Shown here: in pieces, positions 4,182 through 41,631 of the stretch
Numbering within the stretch: the stretch's first letter is position 1
How the letters are laid out: each line of letters begins with the position of its first letter
Source: Octopus sinensis
Taxonomy: Eukaryota
Assembly: GCF_006345805.1 (NCBI RefSeq)
Contig: NW_021835514.1
Coordinates: 1 to 41,631 of the forward strand
Direction of reading: 5' to 3'
Length of the DNA: 41,631 bases
Notes under the pieces: model-generated
Told to the model about the DNA's origin: nothing
What the model saw: only the letters and a program-made list of their open reading frames with translations
Databases searched by the model: none
Translations under genes and position numbers: made by a program

Positions 4182-4342
4182 TGTAGGAATGGCTGTGTTG
4201 TAAGTAGCTTGCTTACCAACCACATGGTTCTGGGTTCAGTCCCACTACGTGGCACCTTGGGCAAGTGTCTTCTACTACAGCCCCGGGCCATCCAAAGCCT
4301 TGTGAGTGGATTTGATGGACGGAAACTGAAAGAAGCCCATCG

Positions 4343-4375
<33 letters not shown>

Positions 4376-4559
4376 ATATATTATATACAAAATAAGAAAA
4401 TGGGAAATATATCTAAATCATTCATCAACTATCAGATAATACCGAATCACATACTTTATTAAAACACTACACAAGAGCATTAAGATTAGACATTAATACA
4501 GTACAACAATTACAATCATTATAATGAGATATAACTAATAAATATATATATATATATAT

Positions 4560-4593
<34 letters not shown>

Positions 4594-4827
4594 CTTCTAA
4601 AATATGTATTTGTATTATTGTTATTTTATCTTATATTACCTATTCATTTATATAATATTTTGTTTGCTTTTGATGTTCTCATTTGTAAAATGAATAAATA
4701 ATCCAACATTATAATATCCCGTAATGATGAATATAAACCAAATTTGTTCCTCCATTTTCTTATTTGTATCATATATATGTGTATATATATATAACTATAT
4801 ATATAATATATATAATATATATATATA

Positions 4828-4874
<47 letters not shown>

Positions 4875-5098
4875 GTGTGTTATATGTTTGTGTGTCTGTG
4901 TTTATCCCCCAACATCGCTTGACAACCGATGCTGGTGTGTTTACGTCCTCGTAGCTTAGCGGTTCGGCAAGAGAGACCGATAGAATAAGTACTAGGCTTC
5001 CAAAGATTATGTCCTGGGGTCGATTTGCTCGACTAAAGGCCTTGCTCCAGCATGGTCACAGTCAAATGACTGAAACACGAAAAGAGGAAAAGAGTAAG
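4182..5098 (+). mobile_element. tRNA-derived SINE family A, split at its internal (TA)n by an insertion
   Basis: 5' half 4182-4343 (A box tggctgtg.tg, B box ggttcagtccc). The 3' half resumes at about 4871 and ends in the aaagag tail. Confidence 0.85.
4386..4768. mobile_element. Small AT-rich element with about 18-bp inverted ends, inserted in (TA)n
   Basis: tacaaaataagaaaatgg (4386) versus ccattttcttatttgta (to 4768). 4386-4520 is homologous to 22173-22300. Confidence 0.55.
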
Positions 5099-5634
5099 CA
5101 ACAGCAATTATGAAAGGGTGGTGAGTCAAAAGCAAAGATGCATACGTACGCATGCGTGTGCCCGCACACACACGCGCGCGCGCGCGCTCACGCACACATA
5201 CACTCGGTGACGCACACATCTCTACGCCTCGCATGTCTGTGCACATCTTATATAAAATGACGTACAAAAAAATTCATAAAATTTTGGAAAATATTTCTTT
5301 ACCCAGGAAGAGTAAGCGAATCGCTCTGTAGCGATTCGCACCGACTACAAATGAGAAATTCAGGTAATTCCAAGAACCAAAAAAGTTGTACATCTTACAT
5401 AAAATGACGTACAAAAAATTCACATTCCATGAAGGAATAAACGCTCTAATAGTCCCGGAGAAAAAATGGCAACTGTGAAGATATGTTTCTGCCTTAACAA
5501 GCGTCATCAACATTGCGAATCCTTGCCTTCCCTTCAATAGACAAAGCAATTATATCAAAATAGAGTGCAACGGATTCATGACCAGAGTAATTTTCACAAC
5601 GTGGCATTTGACTGGTAAGTACAACTGTGGTTGC

Positions 5635-6025: not shown

Positions 6026-6915
6026 TTTGTGGTTGCTGCTGCTGCTACTTATGGTTTCTTAGGAGAGGGAGAGAAAGGGAGGGAGAGAGAGAGTGACTAT
6101 TATGAGATGAAAGAGAGGAAGTATATTCTCCTTAAGGGGAGAGAACTGTTTCAGGGTTTTATGTTATCCTTTGTTTGGTTTTCGTTTTTTACTTATCTGG
6201 AGAGATTTTTTCCACTAAGTGAAAGGGTTTCCATATTCCCATAAAATCAGTTTATTGGACGTTTCTCAATAATAGTCGTTGATAGCGTTATTTCGCCCTT
6301 ATTCTGGGTTCGTCAGTGCAATATAACTTAAAAACTTGATATTAGTCTATATCATTTGAAAAGTTTAAGAATGAAACATTTTCTTTCCATTTCGTTTCGG
6401 TTCCTTTTTGGGTCTTTTTTTTTTATAAAAAAAAATGAGCCAAGAGAAATAATTTAGAATATCCAAAGAGAAATATTTGAAGTACAAGGATGGATTAAGA
6501 TATATTAAATAATACACAAGATAAATTCTTGATTTATTGAAATTATCGCCACTTCCATAATGTTTGGACCTGTAACACGGTAGCATTTGGCACCAACTCC
6601 TAATTATAAGGAAAGATAATCTTAAAAATAAAATCTTTCTAACTGAAATGCCATTGAGGAAAAAGTGCGATTGTTCGAAGTCAAGAGGACCACTGTGGAC
6701 CGCATTAAACTCACTTTATTTCTCTCTGTTCAAATACACTTCTGTCCAGACTTCTTCTTTGGTCTTAATAGAATATATTTAATCGAGATAATATTTTCAC
6801 TCATTATTAATAACACAATCTCATCTATTTGGCAAATTTTTAATCCTTCAGGTGTAAAAATCTTCAGGTTTTGAAGCAAAGAAACACCCAATGTAATTTT
6901 TAACCTCTTTATAAT

Positions 6916-7157
6916 TAATCCTTTGTTAAAAACCCTTCCAACTAAAGGCACAAAATCTGAAATTTTCGGTTGTGTATGGGGGGGGGTCTAGTCGATTACA
7001 TCGACCCCCCGTGTTTCGATGGTTCTTAATTCATCGATATCGAAAGGATGAAAGGCAAAGTCGACCTCGGCGGAATTTGAACTCAGAACCTAAGGACGGA
7101 CGAAATGCCGCTAAGCGGTTTGCCCGGCATGTTAACGATTCTGCCAGCTCGCCGCCT
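6916..7157 (-). mobile_element. SINE family C (3' part of the tRNA-SINE chimera)
   Basis: aggcggcgagctggcagaatcgttaac..gagttcaaattccgccgaggtcgactttgcctttcatcctttcg..aaaggatta tail. Confidence 0.88.
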
Positions 7158-7166
7158 TTAAAATCC

Positions 7167-7279
7167 TACCCTGGGTGAAGTTCGAACTCATAACCGCCGC
7201 ATGTCTCCTGTTTTGGGAATAACACAAAGAAGATACTGTCTAATAAGTACGGCGCGTTAACCGATTGTGCCACCGGGGC
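7167..7279 (-). tRNA. tRNA-Ile(TAT) with 39-nt intron (7203-7241), probably a pseudogene
   Basis: GCCCCGG TG GCAC AATCGGTTA ACGC G CCGTA CT-TAT-T [intron agacagta...] A TGCGG CGGTT ATGAG TTCGAAC TTCAC CCAGGGT A. The anticodon stem pairs and the intron is at the canonical 37/38 position. Mismatches occur in the acceptor, D and T stems, and there is a T at position 37. Confidence 0.8.
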
Positions 7280-7432
7280 AGCTTTATAATCGATTAACTT
7301 TTTTCCCCTCAAAATATTGTTGCAATGATTATCTGTCAGAGCAAGGTCAGGAGAGTAAGGAGGGTGAAGCAAACCTTCCTTATTTTGTAGATATTTTCCT
7401 GAGTAAGTTGGACAATATGTGGTTTGGCATTA

Positions 7433-7797
7433 TCTCTCTATATATAAACCACAAAATGTCTGTGTGTGTGTCCTTTATACAAATCCACAATTATTCAGTT
7501 AGAGGGCTCGTACTTTCTATGGTCATTAAAAACCGTCCAAGGATGGTCGTGCACATCTTTACATTTCCCCAGTCACCCCGCAAAGCCATTAAAAAAATCA
7601 ATAGAAGTGACTTTTTTGTGAATTTTCTATCCAAAACCCAATCAAAATGCCCGAAACTTGATACGCCAATTAAATGACAGCTAGCTGTATTTGATTGGTC
7701 GGAGATTTGGACAGTACTCGCGTGTATGTGCGCACGCACGCAGCTGTATATGCATGCACTAGTACTATGACCCGGCAACGCCGGGTCATAGTGCTAG
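7433..7797 (+). mobile_element. Non-autonomous Helitron
   Basis: 5' TC(tctctatatataaa), 3' hairpin tatgacccgg-caacg-ccgggtcata then CTAG. Inserted between A7432 and T7798 with no TSD. Removal restores the mariner Q-D-N-A codons. Confidence 0.9.
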
Positions 7798-8392
7798 TCT
7801 TGTATAAACAACATACTTTTATGACTGATCAATGATGGACGCTTTTTCTGTAAACTTTTGTGTAATGCTTTCGCTTAACGATAATAATTCTCTGCATTAA
7901 CTGTTTCGTATAATACTTCATGATAGATGATTCTTTTCACACCCCACCAAACACAAAGCACAGATTTTTTCCAATGTAGTCCTGGTTTGGCGTTAGATTC
8001 ACTATTTTCATTGGGTGCTAACCACTTTCATTTTCGTTTGATATGATTATAGAGAACTCGATGATCAGATGGTAGCTCTTAGATCAATCTGAGAAGCAAT
8101 CAGGCAAAGAGAAACCTACTGACACTTTTCTGAATTCATAATTCATCAGAGTGTTTTATGATCGAAATGTGACTTAGATTGAACTGCTTTGCCAATTCTC
8201 ATGCAGTTTCCTTTTGATTTCCCCCAACGTCAGTTTTCAGCAAGTCGATATTGACAGAACTTAGTCGTCCACATTAAAGGAGATCTGCAGATGAAAAATT
8301 TCCAGAGCAAAAGTAGCCAAACCATCATTGGCATGTCTGAACACTAAAAGCTTCTTTTCTTTTAACAGAACGAATAATTCTTCAGCGTCTAT

Positions 8393-8815
8393 GGACCTTT
8401 TCGGTTTGAACGGCAGTTTTTCCTAGCGGTGTCATATGAAATTGTCACCCATAATTATGACCCTAGTATCGATCTATTGCATTTCAATCTGTTTTAAGGT
8501 TAGGGTTAGGGTTAGGGGTGGGGAGAAGGGTATCTTTTTTCTTCACAAATGTAAATAAACCCAATCTGTTTCTTAAATGAGGGACATATTCATACGGCAC
8601 AGAATGCTTTTTAACTCAATAGACGTCAGTGATTAGTTGAAATTGCAGAAATTGAAGAAAAAACAACAATAAATATCTTACAAACTATAGAATTTTCTCA
8701 ATAAAGCCAAGAGAAAAAGATGTTTTATAAACACATTCTACCAGTATACGAAGTTTAAAATTTTTTAGTCACCTAGAAATTATGTTAAAAACTGCCGTTC
8801 AAACCGAAAAGATCC
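8393..8815. mobile_element. MITE with about 28-bp TIRs and 8-bp TSD (hAT/Merlin/P class)
   Basis: ggaccttttcggtttgaacggcagtttt ... aaaactgccgttcaaaccgaaaagatcc. TSD gcgtctat (8385-8392) and gcttctat (8816-8823). Confidence 0.9.
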
Positions 8816-9212: not shown

Positions 9213-9616
9213 TAAATTAGGAAAAAAAACACCTTTTATTAATTCAATAATAAAAAATTAAATTATACCATTTAGAAAAATTACATATTATAGAAAGATT
9301 AAATATACAATAAAACCAATAACAATGATTAAGTAATGTGCAAAATAATAAATAAAATGTATATATTTGGTAGAACAACGTATATATTTGGTAGAATATA
9401 TATATATATATAGGGAGAGAGAGTTTATAAGAGGTAATGGTGTCAGTAAGACCCAAAGGTGTCAGGTAACGCTGAGTAAGTGCTTTGGATAGACCTTAGT
9501 TAAGCTCCAGGTTCGGCGATTATGCGAATGAAGAGTCTAGCGTAGGTCATACATCAGCGTGTGTATATATAAAAAAAAAATTTTCAGAATGAGATAAAAA
9601 GAAAAGTGGCTGTGAT

Positions 9617-10030
9617 AGGCGCAGGAGTGGCTGTGTGGTAAGTAGCTTGTTTACCAACCACATGGCTCCGGGTTCAGTCCCACTGCGTGGCACCTTGGGA
9701 AAGTGTCTACTACTATAGCCTCGGGCCGACCAAAGCCTTGTGAGTGGATTTGGTAGACAGAAACTGAAAGAATCCCGTCGTATATATGTATATATATGTA
9801 TGCGTGTGTGTGTTTGTCCCCCTAGCATTGCTTGACAACCGATGCTGGTGTGTTTACGTCCCCGTAACTTAGCGGTTCGGCAAAAGAGACCGATAGAATA
9901 AGTACTGGGCTTACAAAAGAATAAGTCCCGAGGTCGAGTTGCTCGATAAAGGCGGTGCTCCAGCATGGCCGCAGTCAAATGACTGAAACAAGTAAAAGAG
10001 TAAAGAGTAAAGAGTAAAGAGTAAAAGAGT
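9617..10030 (+). mobile_element. SINE family A, full length
   Basis: aggcgcaggagtggctgtgtgg head, internal (TA)/(TG) run, (GAGTAAA)n tail. Confidence 0.92.
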
Positions 10031-12520: not shown

Positions 12521-12917
12521 TCAAGATCTAAACGTGTACTGTTTAAAGCCGAGGAAGGTGACGCAGGATTAAGGTGCGCCAGGTAGGTGTGTGTGTGATG
12601 AAATGACAATGACGGAATGGTCATGGTCGGAACGCTTTTCGTCTTTCATGTCTGGTCAATTGGTAGCTGAGCGAGAGGTGGTAGACTCTGATTGAACACG
12701 AAAGTAAGAGAAGTGACAACAACAACATCATCACCATCATCAACAACAACATCAAGAACAACAACAGCAGCAGCAGCAGTAGCAGCAACAACAACAACAG
12801 CAACAACAACATAAATAATCAACGTTGACAATGAAGATGGTTGTTGCGGCGACAGAGAAGGAAGGACAAAATCTGCCACAGCTGTGAGGGAAAAAACCAA
12901 CAAGAAAAAACCGACAT

Positions 12918-13084
12918 AGGCGCAGGAGTGGCTGTGTGGTAAGTAGCTTGCTAACCAACCACATGGTCCGGGTTCAGTCCCACTGCGTGGCATCTTGGGC
13001 AAGTGTCTTCTGCTATAGCCCCGGGCCGACCAATGCCTTCTGAGTGGATTTGGTAGACGGAAACTGAAAGAAGCCTGTCGTATG

Positions 13085-13149
<65 letters not shown>

Positions 13150-13362
13150 TTGTGTGTCTGTGTTTGTCCCCCTAGCATTGCTTGACACCGATGCTGGTGT
13201 GTTTACGTCCCCCGTCACTTAGCGGTTCGGCAACATAGACCGATAGATAAGTACTGGGCTTACAAAGAATAAGTCCCGGGTTCGATTTGCTCGACTAAAG
13301 GCGGTGCTCCAGCATGGCCGCAGTCAAATGACTGAAACAAGTAAAAGAGTAAAAGAGTAAAG
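12918..13362 (+). mobile_element. SINE family A, full length
   Basis: Same head, internal microsatellite and tail as 9617. Confidence 0.92.
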
Positions 13363-13604
13363 AAAAGAATGAAAACCAACAACAATAACAACAGCAACAA
13401 GGACAACAACAACAGCAGCAACAAGTGTAAAAAAAAAAGCGACAATAACAATAAATGCAACTGCAGTTAAAATGGCGGTAAACAACGGCAGAAGCTTTGT
13501 CGTTTAGATTTCTGCAACTGGAGCGTGTAAGAGAGCAGTAATGGTGGGGATTGCTATATAATAGAGCAACAAGCAAACTAGCGGCTGTAATAGCAGCAGC
13601 AGCA

Positions 13605-14469: not shown

Positions 14470-14698
14470 TATATTATTTTCTGCTCTGGACACAAGACCC
14501 GAAATTTTGGGGGAGGGGAGGAAGGGGGCAGTCGATTAGATCGAACCCAGTACGCAACTTGTACTTAATTTTTCGATCCCGAAAGGATAAGAGGCAAAAA
14601 TCGACCTGGGTAGAATATGGACTCAGAAAGTAAAGACAGAGAAAATACAGCTATGCATTTCGCCCGGCGTGCCAACGATTCTGGCAGCTTTGCTGCCT
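14470..14698 (-). mobile_element. SINE family C, diverged monomer
   Basis: Reverse complement of the family C head and body. Confidence 0.7.
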
Positions 14699-14716: not shown

Positions 14717-15492
14717 TTTGTTTCTTTATTTCCCACGGGAGACTAAACGTAGAGGGGACAAAGAAGGATAGACAAAGGGGTTAAGTCGATTACATGGACG
14801 CCAATGCGTAACTGGTACTTATTTAATCGACCCCGAAAGAATGAAAGGCAAAATCGAGCTCGGCGGAATTTGAACTCAGAACGTAAAGACAGACGAAATA
14901 CCTATTTCTTTACTACCCACAAGGGGCTAAACAGAGAGGACAGACAAACGGATTAAGTCGATTATATCGACCCCAGTGCGTAACTGCTACTTATTTAATC
15001 GACCCCGAAAGGGTGATAGGTAAAGTCGACCTTGGCGGAATTTGAACTCAGAACGTAAAGACGGACGAAATACCTATTTCTTTACCACCCACAAGGGGCT
15101 AAACACAAAGAGGACAAACAAGGACAGACAAACGGATTAAGTCGATTATATCGACCCCAGTGCGTAGCTGGTACTTATGTAATCGACTCCGAAAGGGTGA
15201 AAGGCAAAGTCGACCTCGGCGGAATTTGAACTCAAAACGTAACGGCAGACGAAATACCTATTTCTTTACTACCCACAAGGGGCTAAATACAGAGAGGACA
15301 AACAAGGACAGTCAAACGGATTAAGTCGATTATATCGAGCCCATTTCGTAAAATGGTACTTATTTAATCGACCCCGAAAGGACGAAAGGCAAAGTCAACC
15401 TCGGCAGAATTTGAACTCAGAACGTAACGGCAGACGAAGTATGGCTACGCATTTCGCCCGGCGTGTTAACGTTTCTGCCAGCGCGCCGACTT
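14717..15492 (-). mobile_element. SINE family C tandem tetramer (one head plus four bodies)
   Basis: Unit junctions gaaatacc|tatttc at 14902/3, 15074/5 and 15258/9; head at about 15440-15492. Confidence 0.88.
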
Positions 15493-17646: not shown

Positions 17647-17904
17647 TATATATATACACATGCATACGAATACATATAAATGAATACATATGTATGTGAG
17701 TGTATACCAGTATATGGAAAGGTGCTGATAGGGGAACCATCAGAGTGATCCTCAGAACGATACATGGTAGTTGAAAATATCAACTCTACTGCAGAAAGAA
17801 AGCTGACCCTCTCGTTCTCTTTCTCTTTCTCTGTATCTGTCTGTCTCCCCCCTCTCTCTCTCTCTCTCTCCTCTCTCTCTGTATATATATATATATAATA
17901 TATA

Positions 17905-18068
17905 CAACAGGCTTCTTTCAGTTTCCGTCTACTAAATCCACTCACAAGAGTTTGGTCGGCCCGAGGCTACAGTAGAAGACACTTGCCAAAGGCGTCACGA
18001 AGTGGAACTGAACCCGGAACCATGTGGTTGGTAAGCAAGCTACTTACCACAAAGCCACTCCTACGCCT
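17905..18068 (-). mobile_element. SINE family A, 5' half
   Basis: Reverse complement of the head up to the internal (TA)n. Confidence 0.85.
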
Positions 18069-18122
18069 ATGTATACTATATATATATATATATATATATA
18101 TACATACACACACATATATATA

Positions 18123-23182: not shown

Positions 23183-23533
23183 GAATTTATTCTTGGCACT
23201 AATTTGCGGAGTGTTAGAGACTTCGGTCCGGAACATTGTCTCTACTCTTGCCAAATTCCAGTATGTTTTGAGGACCCGTACGAAATACACCACACTTTGC
23301 TTTAGTCATTCTAGTGACTGCAAACTTAACCAATGGGCGATGGTAGCAGAAGACAATGAAACGGCAACGTATATAGGTTCTTGTTTTCATTCAACCCTTG
23401 GTAAAGACGCGCAGCTAAAAGGATAGGGATATTTGGCTGACGATTGTGAATACGTGAGTTCGTTTCCCAGCGGTGTGTTGTCTCCTAGAGCTCCACTCTG
23501 TTGCAAGCTTTCGGACAGGATTTTTGGTCTCTC

Positions 23534-23942
23534 TCTTTTACTCTCTTTTACTTGTTTCAGTCATTTGACTGCGGCCATGCTGGAGCACCGCCTTTAGTCG
23601 AGCAACTTGACCCCGGGACTTATTCTTTGTAAGCCCAGTACTTATTCTATCGGTCTCTTTTGCCAAACCGCTAAGTGACGGGGACATAAACACACCAGCA
23701 TCGGTTGTCAAGCAATGCTAGGTGGACAAACACAGTCACACAAACACACACATACATATACATATATATACATATATACGACAGGCTCCTTTCAGTTTCC
23801 GTCTACCAAATCCACTCACAAGACATTGGTCGGCCCGAGGCTATAGCAGAAGACACTTGCCCAAGATGCCACGCAGTGGGACTGAACCCGGAACCATGTG
23901 GTTGGTAAGCAAGCTACTTACCACACAGCCACTCCTGCGCCT
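23534..23942 (-). mobile_element. SINE family A, full length
   Basis: Complete reverse-complement match. Confidence 0.92.
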
Positions 23943-24090
23943 ATGAGAATAATTCCTTTACTTCTTTCCACCATTCTTCGTGGCCTTGACAAAAAGTCAG
24001 AGATCATAAAACGTTGTTTTTCCACCGTTGGCGAATGGATAGGTCACGTGGGAAAATGGCATGATGCTCACAACGGAACTGTTTTGGGTT

Positions 24091-27020: not shown

Positions 27021-27246
27021 TTATGCATATGTACATGTGTATGTATGTATATATACATACACATGTATATATGCACATATATACAAAGGGGTAGCAAAGG
27101 GGAGAAAAAAGAAGGAAAACGGGCAGTGCCGGCGGTTAATACACTGCCGGTATGTCCCGAAGTCCCGTCGGTGGGAATTTGTACTACCGACAGTGGAAGT
27201 TATGGCCTCGACCCATGTGGAGGAATAATTTTTGGTCTTCTTCCAC

Positions 27247-27658
27247 AGGCGCAGGAGTGGCTGTGTGGTAAGTAGCTTGTTTACCAACCACATGGTTCCG
27301 GGTTCAGTCCCACTGCGTGGCACCTTGGGCAAGTATCTTCTACTATAGCCTCGGGTCGACCAAAGCCTTGTGAGTGGATTTGGTAGACGGAAACTGAAAG
27401 AAGCCCGTCGTATATATGTATATTTATGTATGTGCGTGTATGTTTGTGTGTCTGTGTTTGTCCCTCTAGCATTGCTTGACAACCGATGCTGGTGTGTTGA
27501 CGTCCCCGTCACTTAGCGGTTCGGCAAAAGAAACCGATAGAATAAGTACTGGGCTTACAAAGAATAAGTCCCGGGGTCGAGTTGCTCGACTAAAGGCGGT
27601 GCTCCAGCATGGCCGCAGTCAAAATGACTGAAACAAGTAAAAAGAGAAAAAGAGAAAA
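27247..27658 (+). mobile_element. SINE family A, full length
   Basis: Complete family match. Confidence 0.92.
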
Positions 27659-30004: not shown

Positions 30005-31480
30005 GTAGATCGATTCTCTGGCTTATATCCCCATTCGCTTTAAACGTTAAGGGCTTAGCCAAAACCGACTTTCAAATAGTAGACTTTAACTTGCCACGTC
30101 ACCATAAATACCACCCAATATTCAATAGATCTACCATAAAATTATCCTATTCCTCTCCACTGAATATGGAATCTATTGTTACCTCTTTCAATAAACGTAA
30201 ACGTTAAGGGCTTAGCCAAAACCGACTTTCAAATAGTAGACTTTAACTTGCCACGTCACCATAAATACCATCCAAAATTCAATAGATCTACCATAAAATT
30301 ATCCTATTCCTCTCCACTGAATATGGAATCTATTGTTACCTCTTTCAATAAACGTAAACGTTAAGGGCTTAGCCAAAACCGACTTTCAAATAGTAGACTT
30401 TAACTTGCCACGTCACTATAAATACCATCCAAAATTCAATAGATCTACCATAAAATTATCCTATTCCTCTCCACTGAATATGGAATCTATTGTTACCTCT
30501 TTCAATAAACGTAAACGTTAAGGGCTTAGCCAAAACCGACTTTCAAATAGTAGACTTTAACTTGCCACGTCACTATAAATACCATCCAAAATTCAATAGA
30601 TCTACCATAAAATTATCCTATTCCTCTCCACTGAATATGGAATCTATTGTTACCTCTTTCAATAAACGTAAACGTTAAGGGCTTAGCCAAAACCGACTTT
30701 CAAATAGTAGACTTTAACTTGTCACGTCACCATAAATACCATCCAATATTCAATAGATCTACCATAAAATTATCCTATTCCTCTCCACTGAATATGGAAT
30801 CTATTGTTACCTCTTTCAATAAACGTAAACGTTAAGGGCTTAGCCAAAACCGACTTTCAAATAGTAGACTTTAACTTGCCACGTCACCATAAATACCACC
30901 CAAAATTCAATAGATCTACCATAAAATTATCCTATTCCCTCCACTGAATAATGGAATCTATGTTACCTCTTTCAATAAACGTAAACGTTAAGGGCTTAGC
31001 CAAAACCGACTTTCAAATAGTAGACTTTAACTTGCCACGTCACTATAAATACCACCCAATATTCAATAGATCTACCATAAAATTATCCTATTCCTCTCCA
31101 CTGAATATGGAATCTATTGTTACCTCTTTCAATAAACGTAAACGTTAAGGGCTTAGCCAAAACCGACTTTCAAATAGTAGACTTTAACTTGCCACGTCAC
31201 TATAAATACCACCCAATATTCAATAGATCTACCATAAAATTATCCTATTCCTCTCCACTGAATATGGAATCTATTGTTACCTCTTTCAATAAACGTAAAC
31301 GTTAAGGGCTTAGCCAAAACCGACTTTCAAATAGTAGACTTTAACTTGCCACGTCACTATAAATACCACCCAATATTCAATAGATCTACCATAAAATTAT
31401 CCTATTCCTCTCCACTGAATATGGAATCTATTGTTACCTCTTTCAATAAACGTAAACGTAATTCCTTCTACCTAAATATA
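30005..31480 (+). mobile_element. Penelope-like element coding remnant (RT-to-GIY-YIG linker), tandemly amplified
   Basis: GRSILWLISPFALNVK..KTDFQIVDFNLPRHHKYHPIFNRSTIKLSYSSPLNMESIVTSFNKRK matches the recalled PLE motif IIWFNPP(Y/F)S.NV.T..GK.F...D..FP..H..HKIFNR.T.K.SYSC..NM..II..HN. Confidence 0.75.
30042..31459 (+). repeat. Tandem array: 9 units of 157 bp (unit 6 is 156 bp)
   Basis: Unit starts aaacgttaag at 30042, 30199, 30356, 30513, 30670, 30827, 30983, 31140 and 31297; partial aaacgt at 31454. Confidence 0.98.
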
Positions 31481-36720: not shown

Positions 36721-36941
36721 TTACTCTTTTTTACTCTTTTACTTTTTTCAGTCATTTGACTGCGGCCATGCTGGAGCACCACCTTTAATCGACCACATCG
36801 ACCCCAGGACTTATTCTTTGTAAACCTAGTACTTATTCTATCGGCCTCTTTTTGCCAAATCGCTAAGTTACGAAGACGTAAACACACCAGCATCGGTTGT
36901 CAAGCGATGTTGGGGAGGGGGACACATACACACAAACATAT

Positions 36942-36973
<32 letters not shown>

Positions 36974-37153
36974 TATATATATATATACACGACGGGCTTC
37001 TTCCAGTTTCCGTCTACCAAATCCACTCACAAGGATTTGGTCGGCCCGAGGCTATAGTAGAAGACACTTGCCCAAGGTGCCACGCAGTGGGACTGAACCC
37101 GGAACCATGTAGTTCGTAAGGAAGCTACTTACCACACAGCCACTCCTACGCCT
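36721..37153 (-). mobile_element. SINE family A, full length
   Basis: Complete reverse-complement match. Confidence 0.92.
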
Positions 37154-37357
37154 GTGGGAAAGAATTTTGATGCAGCTGTCTGTATCACGTCTTACAGCCT
37201 TTAGAGTGTTTACAGAGCACTGTAAGCAGTCGTGATGTCGGCATTTTGATACCTGGCGCAAATCATCACCATGCAGGTAACTCTTTTCCAGTATTCAGAT
37301 GGCTTTCAGTCGTCCATATCAACTACAAATCTAATCTTTATGCTCTCCTACGCCGTT

Positions 37358-37853
37358 ATGATATGCATAAGATCTGGTCATCAAATCTTAGTAGAGACTT
37401 CAAACTTGAAATCTTCAAAGCCACAGTCGAACCAGTTCTATTATATGGCTCAGAAACCTGGACGTTATCAAAGAAGCTTGAGAAGCACTTAGATGGAACC
37501 TACACTCGCCTCATTATGAGAGCTCAAAATCTCTCATGGAAGCGTCATCCAACCAAAATGCAAATATATGGGAAACTACCACCTGTGTCATCTCTTGTGA
37601 AAGGTAGGAGAGTCCAGTTTGCTGGACATTGTTGTAGAGCTGAAAACGAGGCAATTTCTACTCTTCTCCTCTGGAAGACATCTACTCGCGATACCAGAGG
37701 GCGCACACTCTCCTACCCTGATGTAATCTCCAGGGATACAGGCTGGATGCAACAGGACATCCATAATGCTATGATGGACCGTGAAGTCTGGCGTAGCATG
37801 GAAAATTCCATTGTCTCGATCACGGTCGAACAATGATGATGATGATGATGATG
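37358..37853 (+). mobile_element. RTE-group (RTEX-like) LINE, 5'-truncated
   Basis: KIWSSNLSRDFKLEIFKATVEPVLLYGSETWTL..RRVQFAGHC..MMDREVWR..EQ*; (TGA)n tail; 8-bp TSD acgccgtt (37350-37357 and 37854-37861). Confidence 0.9.
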
Positions 37854-38074: not shown

Positions 38075-38298
38075 CGAGCTGGCAGAACGTTAGCATGCCG
38101 GGCGAAATGCATAGCCGTATTTCGTCTGCAGTTACGTTCTGGGTTCAAATTCCGCCGAGGTCAACTTAGCCTGTCACCCTTTCGGGGTCGATAAATTAAG
38201 TACCATTTACATACTGGGGTCGATCTAATCGACTTAATCCGTTTGTATGTCCTTGTTTGTCCCCTCAGTGTTTAGCCCATTGTGGGTAGTAAAGAAAT
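38075..38298 (+). mobile_element. SINE family C monomer
   Basis: gagctggcagaacgttagc..ggttcaaattccgccgaggtc..gtagtaaagaaat. Confidence 0.9.
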
Positions 38299-41187: not shown

Positions 41188-41519
41188 AGCGACGAGCTGG
41201 CAGAATTGTTAGCACGCCGGACGAAATGCTTAGCGGTATTTCGTCTGCCGTTACGTTCTGAGTTCAAAATCCACCGAGGTCGACTTTGCCTTTCATCCTT
41301 TCGAGGTTTATAAATTAAGTACCAGTTACGCACTGGAGTTGATATAATTGATTTAATCCGTTTGTCTGTCCTTGTTCGTCCTCTCTGTGTTTAGCCCCTT
41401 GTGGGTAGTAAAGAAATAAGTATTTCGTCTGCCGTTACGTTCTGAGTTCAAATTCCGCCGTGGTCGACTTTGCCTTTCAATCTTTCGGGGTCTATAAATT
41501 AAGTACCAGTTACGCACTG
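41188..41519 (+). mobile_element. SINE family C dimer (second unit partial)
   Basis: Restart at aagaaataag|tatttcgtc (about 41420), the same junction as in the 14717-15492 array. Confidence 0.88.
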
Positions 41520-41631
41520 AGGACGTCTCTCGTTGGAAGTGCTTTGCTGCGCCTCTGTTTTGTTTTGTTTGACAACGTAATTCTGGTTTTTCTGAAGAGA
41601 AAGCTGCAATATGGTATCCTTATTTAATCAG

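What the first reader, a model, noticed from the sequence alone, without database searches (positions are those of the whole stretch)
6907..7290. Intron-containing pre-tRNA-Ile(TAT) fused to a SINE and inserted as one unit
On the minus strand, TSD attataaag (7290-7282) is followed by 2 nt, a tRNA-Ile(TAT) with its 39-nt intron, the spacer ggattttaa, a full family C SINE with tail, and attataaag again (6915-6907). The duplication sits inside mariner coding sequence (DYK|EVKNY), so the tRNA did not originate here. Retention of the intron points to an unspliced Pol III read-through transcript or an RT template switch from SINE RNA to pre-tRNA. This could be a route for dispersing tRNA genes or an incipient dimeric SINE.
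Basis: partly seen in the sequence, partly recalled or inferred. Interest (0 to 1): 0.72.

Follow-up and report, generated by a model that had tools for sequence, protein, structure and literature searches.

The report
Dead pre-tRNA-Ile copy joined to SINE
A decayed copy of an unspliced isoleucine tRNA precursor lies head-to-tail with a short retrotransposon (SINE) inside one duplicated target site in a dead mariner transposon; it is a rare by-product of retrotransposition, and the short "spacer" between the two parts is a near-copy of the target, so one-step insertion is likely but not proven.

Summary
On the minus strand, ATTATAAAG (7290-7282) is followed by CT, a tRNA-Ile(TAT) with a 39-nt intron at the canonical 37/38 position (7279-7167), GGATTTTAA(AG), a full-length tRNA-derived SINE (7156-6916), and ATTATAAAG again (6915-6907). 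Joining the flanks with one repeat copy restores the mariner transposase frame (…LRGKKLIDYK|EVKNYIGCFFASK…). That frame aligns without a gap to SETMAR and Mos1, so the 9-mer is a true target-site duplication.

The tRNA is a decayed pseudogene and occurs once in the window. The SINE has nine other copies or fragments.

New finding: the "spacer" is not anonymous. GATTTTAAAG (7165-7156) matches the target GATTATAAAG at 9 of 10 positions, so the layout is [T]-tRNA-[T']-SINE-[T]. The same layout occurs around two SINEs at 15510-14454.

This opens a serious rival to the single-unit reading: two successive insertions re-using one target. I favour a single retrotransposition event (about 0.55), either a read-through co-transcript or an end-to-end template jump onto the U-tailed pre-tRNA. 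Two events get about 0.28.

No cephalopod genome was reachable, so copy number, source locus and orthologous sites are untested. This is a moderately interesting single dead locus.

The parts
7282..7290 (-). Left copy of the target-site duplication, ATTATAAAG. With G7291 it reads GATTATAAAG.
   Evidence: One copy restores the mariner frame.
7280..7281 (-). CT, a 2-nt putative pre-tRNA 5' leader. ARAGORN instead pairs T7280 with A7167 as an eighth acceptor pair.
7242..7279 (-). tRNA-Ile(TAT) exon 1 (38 nt). The A-box-like TGGCACAATCGG lies at 7272-7261.
   Evidence: Rfam alignment; ARAGORN; coordinates.
7203..7241 (-). 39-nt intron at the canonical position after nucleotide 37.
   Evidence: ARAGORN intron call. 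The Rfam alignment shows a 42-nt insertion in the anticodon loop.
7167..7202 (-). tRNA-Ile(TAT) exon 2 (36 nt), ending in discriminator A7167. The B-box-like GAGTTCGAACTTC lies at 7189-7177.
7156..7166 (-). Junction GGATTTTAAAG. It can be read as trailer GGA + T4 + AAAG. It can also be read as G plus a once-changed third copy (GATTTTAAAG) of the target GATTATAAAG. The last G is shared with the SINE start.
   Evidence: 9/10 match; only 4 such 10-mers in the window, 3 of them at this site; 5' flanks of other copies.
6916..7156 (-). Full-length tRNA-derived SINE. A box TGGCAGAATCG at 7146-7136; B box GAGTTCAAATTCC at 7084-7072; copy-specific 3' segment GGGTTTTTAACAAAGGATTA at 6935-6916.
   Evidence: Nine other copies or fragments at 71-85% identity. 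Same 5' start as four other intact copies. Alignment of the 3' part with two copies of the same subfamily.
6907..6915 (-). Right copy of the target-site duplication, ATTATAAAG.
6779..6906 (-). Host mariner transposase remnant, C-terminal end: EVKNYIGCFFASKPEDFYT*RIKNLPNR*DCVINNE*KYYLD*.
7291..7432 (-). Host mariner remnant upstream of the insertion: DNAKPHIVQ…LLHPPYSPDLALTDNHCNNILRGKKLID(YK). It carries one frameshift.

Best explanation
What it is: a dead retro-copy of a complete, unprocessed Pol III primary transcript of a tRNA-Ile(UAU) gene. It has a 2-nt leader, both exons, the 39-nt intron, trailer GGA and a T4 run. It is joined head-to-tail to a full-length tRNA-derived SINE, and both sit in one 9-bp target site in the C-terminal coding region of a degenerate mariner transposon, in what looks like an octopus-type genome.

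How it most likely arose (inferred): one LINE-mediated target-primed reverse transcription event. The reverse transcriptase started on the SINE's ATTA-type 3' tail, which overlaps the ATTA at the start of the target. It copied the SINE to its 5' end and then continued into pre-tRNA sequence. Two routes could give that continuation:
(a) The two were one read-through transcript from a source locus where this SINE lies just after the tRNA gene's weak T4 terminator. This would be a 5' transduction.
(b) The reverse transcriptase jumped end-to-end from the SINE RNA's 5' end to the oligo-U 3' end of a free pre-tRNA.
I cannot separate (a) from (b); I put each at about 0.27-0.3.

What is shown: the parts, their order, the target-site duplication, the precise empty site and the decay of the tRNA.

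The element has no present function.
For: - The outer 9-bp repeat and exact restoration of the mariner frame show that everything between 7281 and 6916 is inserted.
- Every hallmark of an unprocessed Pol III primary transcript is kept: leader, intron at 37/38, no CCA, and a 3-nt trailer followed by exactly T4. Mature or end-processed tRNA would lack these.
- The T4 abuts the point where the other four intact copies of the SINE begin. This is what an end-to-end join of two natural RNA ends predicts. It also fits a SINE sitting in its usual pyrimidine-rich 5' flank (YTYTYAA|G in 5 of 5 copies; absent from the second SINE family).
- Only the SINE supplies a 3' tail of the type seen on other copies, so a single event needs no tail-less priming.
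- Pol III read-through into tRNA 3' flanks is documented (PMC3141230). Chimeric retrocopies formed by template switching or RNA joining, flanked by one target-site duplication, are documented for LINE-1 (bioRxiv 10.1101/2025.02.02.635956).
- Weak hint: the SINE's 3' end AAGGGTTTTTAACAAAG resembles the tRNA 3' end plus spacer, as if the SINE's source-locus duplication had been carried along (P about 0.014-0.02 against random window segments, 0.10 against shuffles).
Against: - The junction 10-mer GATTTTAAAG matches the target GATTATAAAG at 9 of 10 positions. Apart from the three copies at this site, only 1 of 83,244 10-mers in the window is that close.
- A single-event model must put this down to target-site or microhomology preference plus chance. 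My rough estimate is P about 0.01-0.06, resting on only five flanks.
- The window holds an unambiguous case of two SINEs sharing three copies of one 21-nt target, so re-use of a target does happen here.
- T4 was an efficient terminator for human Pol III in vitro (PMC3141230).
- The tRNA part is single-copy in the window. No source locus or second composite could be looked for.
Confidence: 0.55

Rival explanations
1. Two independent retro-insertions re-used the same staggered target. One element, SINE or pre-tRNA, inserted first and duplicated (G)ATTATAAAG. The second then inserted into one of the two copies using the same nick sites. This gives [T]-CT-tRNA-G-[T]-SINE-[T]. A later A-to-T change in the middle copy created the T4 run. 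Under this reading the pre-tRNA copy is a free-standing 'tailless' retropseudogene, possibly primed through complementarity between its trailer and the nicked target.
For: - The middle 10-mer matches the target at 9 of 10 positions. This is far beyond chance without a motif assumption.
- The tRNA segment therefore has its own 10-bp flanking repeat.
- An independent [T]-SINE-[T]-SINE-[T] arrangement has three copies of a 21-nt target (minus strand 15510-15490, 14717-14697, 14474-14454; 15-17 of 21 pairwise).
- Tail-less tRNA retro-copies whose targets are complementary to the RNA's 3' end are known in mammals (PMC5322556).
- One substitution in 10 nt fits the decay level seen: the SINE is 11.9% from its consensus, and the tRNA has at least 6 structure-breaking changes in 74 nt.
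Against: - The one change in the middle copy must be exactly the transversion that creates a T4 run 3 nt after the discriminator. That is 1 of 30 possible single changes, and transversions are the rarer class.
- The copied RNA would end at A73+G. This is neither a primary transcript end (U-run), nor an RNase Z product, nor a CCA end.
- The pre-tRNA would need priming without the SINE/LINE tail. The described tailless class is specific to therian L1 and is truncated at loops (PMC5322556); this copy is full-length.
Confidence: 0.28
2. The composite is one member of a multicopy dimeric SINE family. Its left monomer is an intron-containing tRNA-Ile gene that supplies the Pol III promoter. Its right monomer is the SINE, which supplies the LINE-recognised tail. 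This is a special case of the read-through model in which the composite itself became a master copy.
For: - A- and B-box-like motifs are still recognisable in the tRNA part.
- The composite has a SINE tail and a target-site duplication.
- Dimeric SINEs formed by fusion of Pol III units are a known kind (from memory; not checked here).
Against: - The tRNA part and the junction occur once in the 41.6-kb window, whereas the SINE alone has nine other copies or fragments.
- Pattern scans for the junction in the available collections found nothing, but those collections are not cephalopod genomes.
- There is no positive evidence of multiplicity.
Confidence: 0.1
3. The segment did not arise by retrotransposition. 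It would be a DNA segment (tRNA gene plus adjacent SINE) copied from elsewhere during double-strand-break repair, or an assembly artefact.
For: Only indirect evidence. Short similarities at both junctions (AAAG, GATTA) could serve as microhomologies.
Against: - A clean 9-bp duplication with exact frame restoration.
- The insert ends precisely in a SINE tail overlapping the target's ATTA.
- The insert starts 2 nt before the tRNA, so its extent equals a transcript rather than an arbitrary DNA piece.
Confidence: 0.07

Closest known systems
Chimeric retrocopies of small Pol III RNAs fused to a LINE-1 or Alu 3' part (U6/L1 type; tRNA/L1 chimeras in bioRxiv 10.1101/2025.02.02.635956)
   Same: Two different RNAs are joined in the same orientation. 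The small RNA is on the 5' side and keeps its natural 3' end. One target-site duplication brackets the whole. The proposed mechanisms are template switching during target-primed reverse transcription, or joining of the RNAs beforehand.
   Different: - The 3' partner here is a full-length SINE, not a 5'-truncated LINE.
- The 5' partner is an untrimmed, intron-containing pre-tRNA. The reported tRNA/L1 chimeras (21 loci) are mostly half-tRNAs in antisense orientation.
- The host is a mollusc whose LINE partner is unknown.
- The junction carries a near-copy of the target, which those chimeras are not described as having.
Tailless tRNA-derived retropseudogenes of therian mammals (PMC5322556)
   Same: A tRNA-derived retro-copy with no A-tail and its own short flanking repeat. 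The target resembles the RNA's 3' end.
   Different: Those copies are truncated at internal single-stranded loops, come from processed RNAs, use the L1 target TT/WAAAA, and are described as therian-specific. This copy is full-length, unspliced and lies in a cephalopod-type genome.
[quoted passage not shown]
   Same: An upstream transcription unit reads through a weak terminator into downstream sequence. The retroelement's 3' end then mobilises the whole transcript.
   Different: 5' transduction is described for Pol II-driven L1 and SVA (from memory). I found no report of a SINE carrying an upstream tRNA gene. No source locus is shown here.
Tandem SINE insertions sharing a target-site duplication
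   Same: The [T]-X-[T]-Y-[T] layout, as at 15510-14454 in this window.
   Different: At the focal locus one of the two units is a pre-tRNA copy without a LINE-type tail.

Membership tests
Functional eukaryotic tRNA-Ile(UAU) gene | Cloverleaf with intact stems that scores above the curated threshold | tested here: not met
   Rfam tRNA scores 22.9 bits against a gathering score of 29. There are two D-stem mismatches, C5:A68 and A49:C65. ARAGORN calls it at default stringency only after the intron is removed.
Functional eukaryotic tRNA-Ile(UAU) gene | Anticodon TAT with an intron directly 3' of position 37 | tested here: met
   ARAGORN reports Ile(tat) with a 39-nt intron at the canonical site. 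However, position 37 is T rather than a purine.
Functional eukaryotic tRNA-Ile(UAU) gene | Native genomic locus, not nested in another element | tested here: not met
   It lies inside the mariner transposase reading frame, between duplicated target copies.
LINE-mediated (target-primed) retro-insertion | Target-site duplication and a precise empty site | tested here: met
   A 9/9 repeat. Joining the flanks gives a gapless alignment to SETMAR and Mos1 (E=2e-12) and to P0001-P0003.
LINE-mediated (target-primed) retro-insertion | The 3' end carries the tail recognised by the LINE partner, adjacent to the duplication | tested here: inconclusive
   The insert ends in …GGATTA|ATTATAAAG. Other copies end in AATAAT or ATTATGATT. 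The LINE partner was not identified.
Single-event chimeric retrocopy (template switch or co-transcript) | Both parts in the same orientation within one duplication, with no target-derived sequence between them | tested here: inconclusive
   Orientation and the outer duplication are met. However, the junction 10-mer matches the target at 9 of 10 positions.
Single-event chimeric retrocopy (template switch or co-transcript) | A source locus (tRNA gene followed by the SINE), or further copies with the same junction and different duplications | not testable with these tools
   No cephalopod genome is in the collections. Scans of metagenome, genome and viral contigs found nothing. Protein-word routes found nothing.
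Tailless tRNA retropseudogene (PMC5322556) | 3' truncation at an internal single-stranded region of a processed RNA | tested here: not met
   The copy is full-length with leader, intron and trailer.
Tailless tRNA retropseudogene (PMC5322556) | Its own flanking direct repeats, with the target complementary to the RNA's 3' end | tested here: inconclusive
   GATTATAAAG … GATTTTAAAG brackets the tRNA. The same sequence can be read as trailer plus T4.
Dimeric or composite SINE family | Many dispersed copies sharing the same junction | tested here: inconclusive
   The tRNA part occurs once in the 41.6-kb window, against nine other SINE copies or fragments. The genome-wide count is not testable here.

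The most novel reading that the evidence does not exclude
The locus is an offspring of an active tRNA-Ile(UAU)-SINE co-transcription unit, in effect a newborn dimeric SINE. Such a unit would spread intron-containing tRNA-Ile gene copies through the cephalopod genome by retrotransposition. Some copies would still be transcribable, which would make retroposition a route of tRNA gene dispersal.
Probability: 0.1. Interest if true: 0.7.

Novelty: new variant of a known kind. Interest (0 to 1): 0.4.

Why it matters
If this was a single event, it shows that a non-mammalian LINE/SINE system can reverse-transcribe a wholly unprocessed Pol III primary transcript and paste it next to a SINE. That is how composite or dimeric SINEs and dispersed tRNA pseudogenes could be born, and the kept intron acts as a barcode for finding the source gene. 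If it was two events, it shows strong re-use of target sites and a tail-less pre-tRNA retro-copy outside therian mammals. Either way it is one decayed locus with no present function. Its value is as a lead for a genome-wide search, not as a finding in itself.

Tried and rejected
- ARAGORN relaxed mode with introns as evidence for the tRNA: rejected, because it makes about 0.5 false calls per simulated window. I replaced it with the intron-removed test.
- Rfam on the whole window: nothing at gathering score. In E-value mode it returned only microsatellite-driven miRNA noise.
- Fetching other copies through proteins:
  - The antisense SINE-junction ORF found no word match.
  - The mariner translation found only 31-36% identical relatives with no cephalopod context.
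  - The reverse-transcriptase ORF at 37246-37836 is not on record.
- DNA pattern scans for the junction and for the SINE core in metagenome, genome and viral contigs: no hits.
- Literature:
  - Searches for printed SINE sequence found nothing.
  - A supplement search of the O. vulgaris repeat paper found nothing.
  - The octopus genome paper is not held.
- A single-event mechanism that would itself produce three target copies (the reverse transcriptase copying the top-strand overhang before jumping to the pre-tRNA): considered and rejected. In that case the pre-tRNA cDNA would be a flap lost at second-strand synthesis.
- Pfam on the mariner C-terminal fragment: no match. I used the PDB sequence search instead.
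- Target-site duplications for SINE copies at 749 and 41196: none recognisable.

Full report
**What is there.** The coordinates below are on the minus strand.

| Feature | Coordinates |
|---|---|
| ATTATAAAG (left) | 7290-7282 |
| CT | 7281-7280 |
| tRNA exon 1 (38 nt) | 7279-7242 |
| Intron (39 nt) | 7241-7203 |
| tRNA exon 2 (36 nt, ends in discriminator A) | 7202-7167 |
| GGATTTTAAAG | 7166-7156 |
| tRNA-derived SINE | 7156-6916 |
| ATTATAAAG (right) | 6915-6907 |

The window is 39% G+C and is full of microsatellites and tRNA-derived SINEs. From memory, the SINE sequences look like octopus SINEs. I could not confirm the organism with any tool.

**Is the tRNA real?** Rfam's tRNA model aligns end-to-end with a 42-nt insertion in the anticodon loop. 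It scores 22.9 bits, below the gathering score of 29, and nothing in the window reaches gathering score.

ARAGORN finds the tRNA only in relaxed mode with introns allowed. I tested that mode on 80 simulated or shuffled windows and it makes about 0.5 false calls per window. It is therefore not evidence on its own.

After removing the 39 nt in silico, ARAGORN at default stringency calls tRNA-Ile(TAT). The same 80 control windows give no intron-less call at all. The exons therefore form a genuine tRNA, and the intron sits at the canonical 37/38 site.

The tRNA is decayed. It has two D-stem mismatches, C5:A68, A49:C65, G53:T61 and T at position 37. The tRNA part occurs once in the window.

**Is the 9-mer a target-site duplication?** Joining the two flanks with a single ATTATAAAG gives the reading frame …LLHPPYSPDLALTDNHCNNILRGKKLIDYK|EVKNYIGCFFASKPEDFYT…. 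This aligns without a gap across the junction to the human SETMAR mariner domain (E=2e-12) and to Mos1 transposase. It also aligns without a gap to three database mariner transposases.

The ancestral mariner therefore had one copy of the 9-mer, and all 366 nt between the copies are inserted.

**The SINE.** Nine other copies or fragments of the same superfamily are in the window at 71-85% identity. The focal copy starts at the same position as the four other 5'-intact copies (G[G/T]C[G/A]GC…). It is 11.9% from a six-copy consensus.

Two copies, at 14688 and 749, share its 3' half. After …TTGTGCC(N5)…AAAA they diverge into short ATT/ATTA-like tails. The focal copy has an extra GGGTTTTTAACAAAGGATTA. 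The ATTA at the end of the tail overlaps the ATTA at the start of the target, as expected for priming by microhomology.

All five intact copies have a pyrimidine-rich flank ending in …AA(G) directly upstream: CTTTCAAG, CTCTCAAG, GTTTAAG, CTCTTAGA and TTTTAAAG. The second abundant SINE family in the window lacks this flank.

The "spacer" is not anonymous. GATTTTAAAG (7165-7156) differs from the target-plus-one GATTATAAAG (7291-7282) at one position. Of 83,244 10-mers on both strands of the window, only four are within one mismatch of GATTATAAAG. Three of them are the copies at this site.

The layout is therefore [T]-CT-tRNA-G-[T']-SINE-[T], and the tRNA has its own flanking repeat.

The window holds an independent example of this layout. 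Three copies of a 21-nt target lie at 15510-15490, 14717-14697 and 14474-14454 (minus strand): ATATATTATTTACCTCTCAAG, ATATATCATTTGTCTTTCAAG and ATATATTTTATTCCTTTCAAA. They bracket two different SINE copies. Re-use of one target by two insertions therefore does occur here.

**Weighing the mechanisms.** Three models fit the outer duplication equally well.

- **M1:** one Pol III read-through transcript (tRNA gene, weak T4, SINE) from a source locus, mobilised through the SINE tail.
- **M2:** the reverse transcriptase reached the 5' end of the SINE RNA and jumped to the oligo-U 3' end of a free pre-tRNA.
- **M3:** two successive insertions into the same target, followed by an A-to-T change in the middle copy.

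M1 and M2 naturally explain why every mark of a primary transcript is present: leader, intron, no CCA, and a 3-nt trailer followed by exactly T4. They also explain why the T4 abuts the normal SINE start. They must put the 9/10 match down to target or microhomology preference plus chance. I estimate P of about 0.01-0.06 from the five flanks, which is a small sample.

M3 explains the match directly but has three costs:
- The single change must be the one transversion that creates a T4 run 3 nt after the discriminator. That is 1 of 30 possible single changes.
- The copied RNA would end at A73+G, which matches no natural tRNA 3' end.
- It needs tail-less priming, which is described only for therian L1 and only for loop-truncated RNAs (PMC5322556).

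The likelihoods come out within a small factor of each other, and the priors tip towards a single event. I give about 0.55 to a single event, split roughly evenly between M1 and M2. I give 0.28 to M3 and the rest to other explanations.

A weak extra hint for M1 is that the SINE's 3' end AAGGGTTTTTAACAAAG resembles the tRNA 3' end plus spacer CAGGGTAGGATTTTAAAG. This gives P of 0.014-0.02 against random window segments but 0.10 against shuffles. I do not lean on it.

In human in vitro assays T4 terminates efficiently, although Pol III often runs into tRNA 3' flanks in vivo (PMC3141230).

**Comparison with what is known.** The closest known things are:
- chimeric retrocopies such as U6/L1 and the 21 tRNA/L1 loci recently catalogued (bioRxiv 10.1101/2025.02.02.635956). 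That paper stresses the same problem of telling chimeric from sequential insertions.
- tailless tRNA retropseudogenes (PMC5322556).
- composite SINEs.

The present case differs in four ways. The 5' partner is a full-length, unspliced, untrimmed pre-tRNA in sense orientation. The 3' partner is a full-length SINE. The host is a mollusc. The junction carries a near-copy of the target. I found no report of such a composite, but my literature search was limited.

**What could not be done.** No cephalopod genome was reachable. Protein-word searches with ORFs across the tRNA and the junction, exact look-ups, and pattern scans of metagenome, genome and viral contigs all returned nothing. The mariner search returned only distant relatives. 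Copy number, the source tRNA gene, its trailer and the orthologous site are therefore untested, and these are the decisive data.

**Verdict.** This is a single, decayed, non-functional locus and a new variant of known chimeric or adjacent retro-copies. Interest is 0.4.

Noticed in passing
window 7433-7797 (+): A Helitron-like non-autonomous element of 365 bp. It starts with TC and ends in a 19-nt-stem hairpin (7758-7798) plus CTAG, and is inserted between A7432 and T7798. Removing it restores the mariner frame LFIQ-D-NAKPH across the catalytic HDNA motif.
   Followed up: partly
window 15510-14454 (minus strand): A [T]-SINE-[T]-SINE-[T] arrangement. Three diverged copies of a 21-nt target (15-17 of 21 identical pairwise) bracket two different SINE copies. 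This suggests strong re-use of target sites by this SINE's LINE partner.
   Followed up: partly
window 14758-15438 and 41236-41525: SINE copies carry internal tandem arrays of a 184-bp unit of their own body (3.8 units at about 85% identity in the first). SINE-derived satellite formation appears to be in progress.
   Followed up: no
window 8393-8815: A 423-bp MITE-like unit with 29-nt terminal inverted repeats (97% complementary). It abuts the N-terminal side of the mariner remnant and contains an interstitial (TTAGGG)3-like run at 8494-8517.
   Followed up: no
5' flanks of SINE copies at window 749, 7156, 14696, 15489 and 41189: All five 5'-intact copies of this SINE are preceded by a pyrimidine-rich run ending in AA(G), of the form YTYTYAA|G. 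This is either a top-strand nick or microhomology preference, or a transcribed leader. The second SINE family lacks it.
   Followed up: partly
window 4183-5099, 9615-10026, 12915-13374, 17882-18072, 23531-23945, 27244-27658, 36721-37160: A second abundant SINE of about 420 bp has at least seven copies at 82-93% identity. Its head starts CATAGGCGCAGGAGTGGCTGTGTGG, it has a CORE-like centre, and its tail is (AAAAGAGT)n.
   Followed up: no
window 30041-31459: A 157-bp satellite with 9 units at 98% identity, so it is very young or homogenised.
   Followed up: no
window 37246-37836 (+): An intact 196-aa ORF resembling the C-terminal part of a non-LTR reverse transcriptase. It lies upstream of a 5'-truncated SINE copy at 38075 whose duplication is ATATAC(GAG). 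The exact protein is not on record in the collection.
   Followed up: partly
window 6939-6923 versus 7173-7156 (minus strand): The SINE's 3' end AAGGGTTTTTAACAAAG weakly resembles the tRNA 3' end plus spacer CAGGGTAGGATTTTAAAG. P is about 0.014-0.02 against random window segments and 0.10 against shuffles. It could be a carried-along source-locus duplication, or chance.
   Followed up: partly
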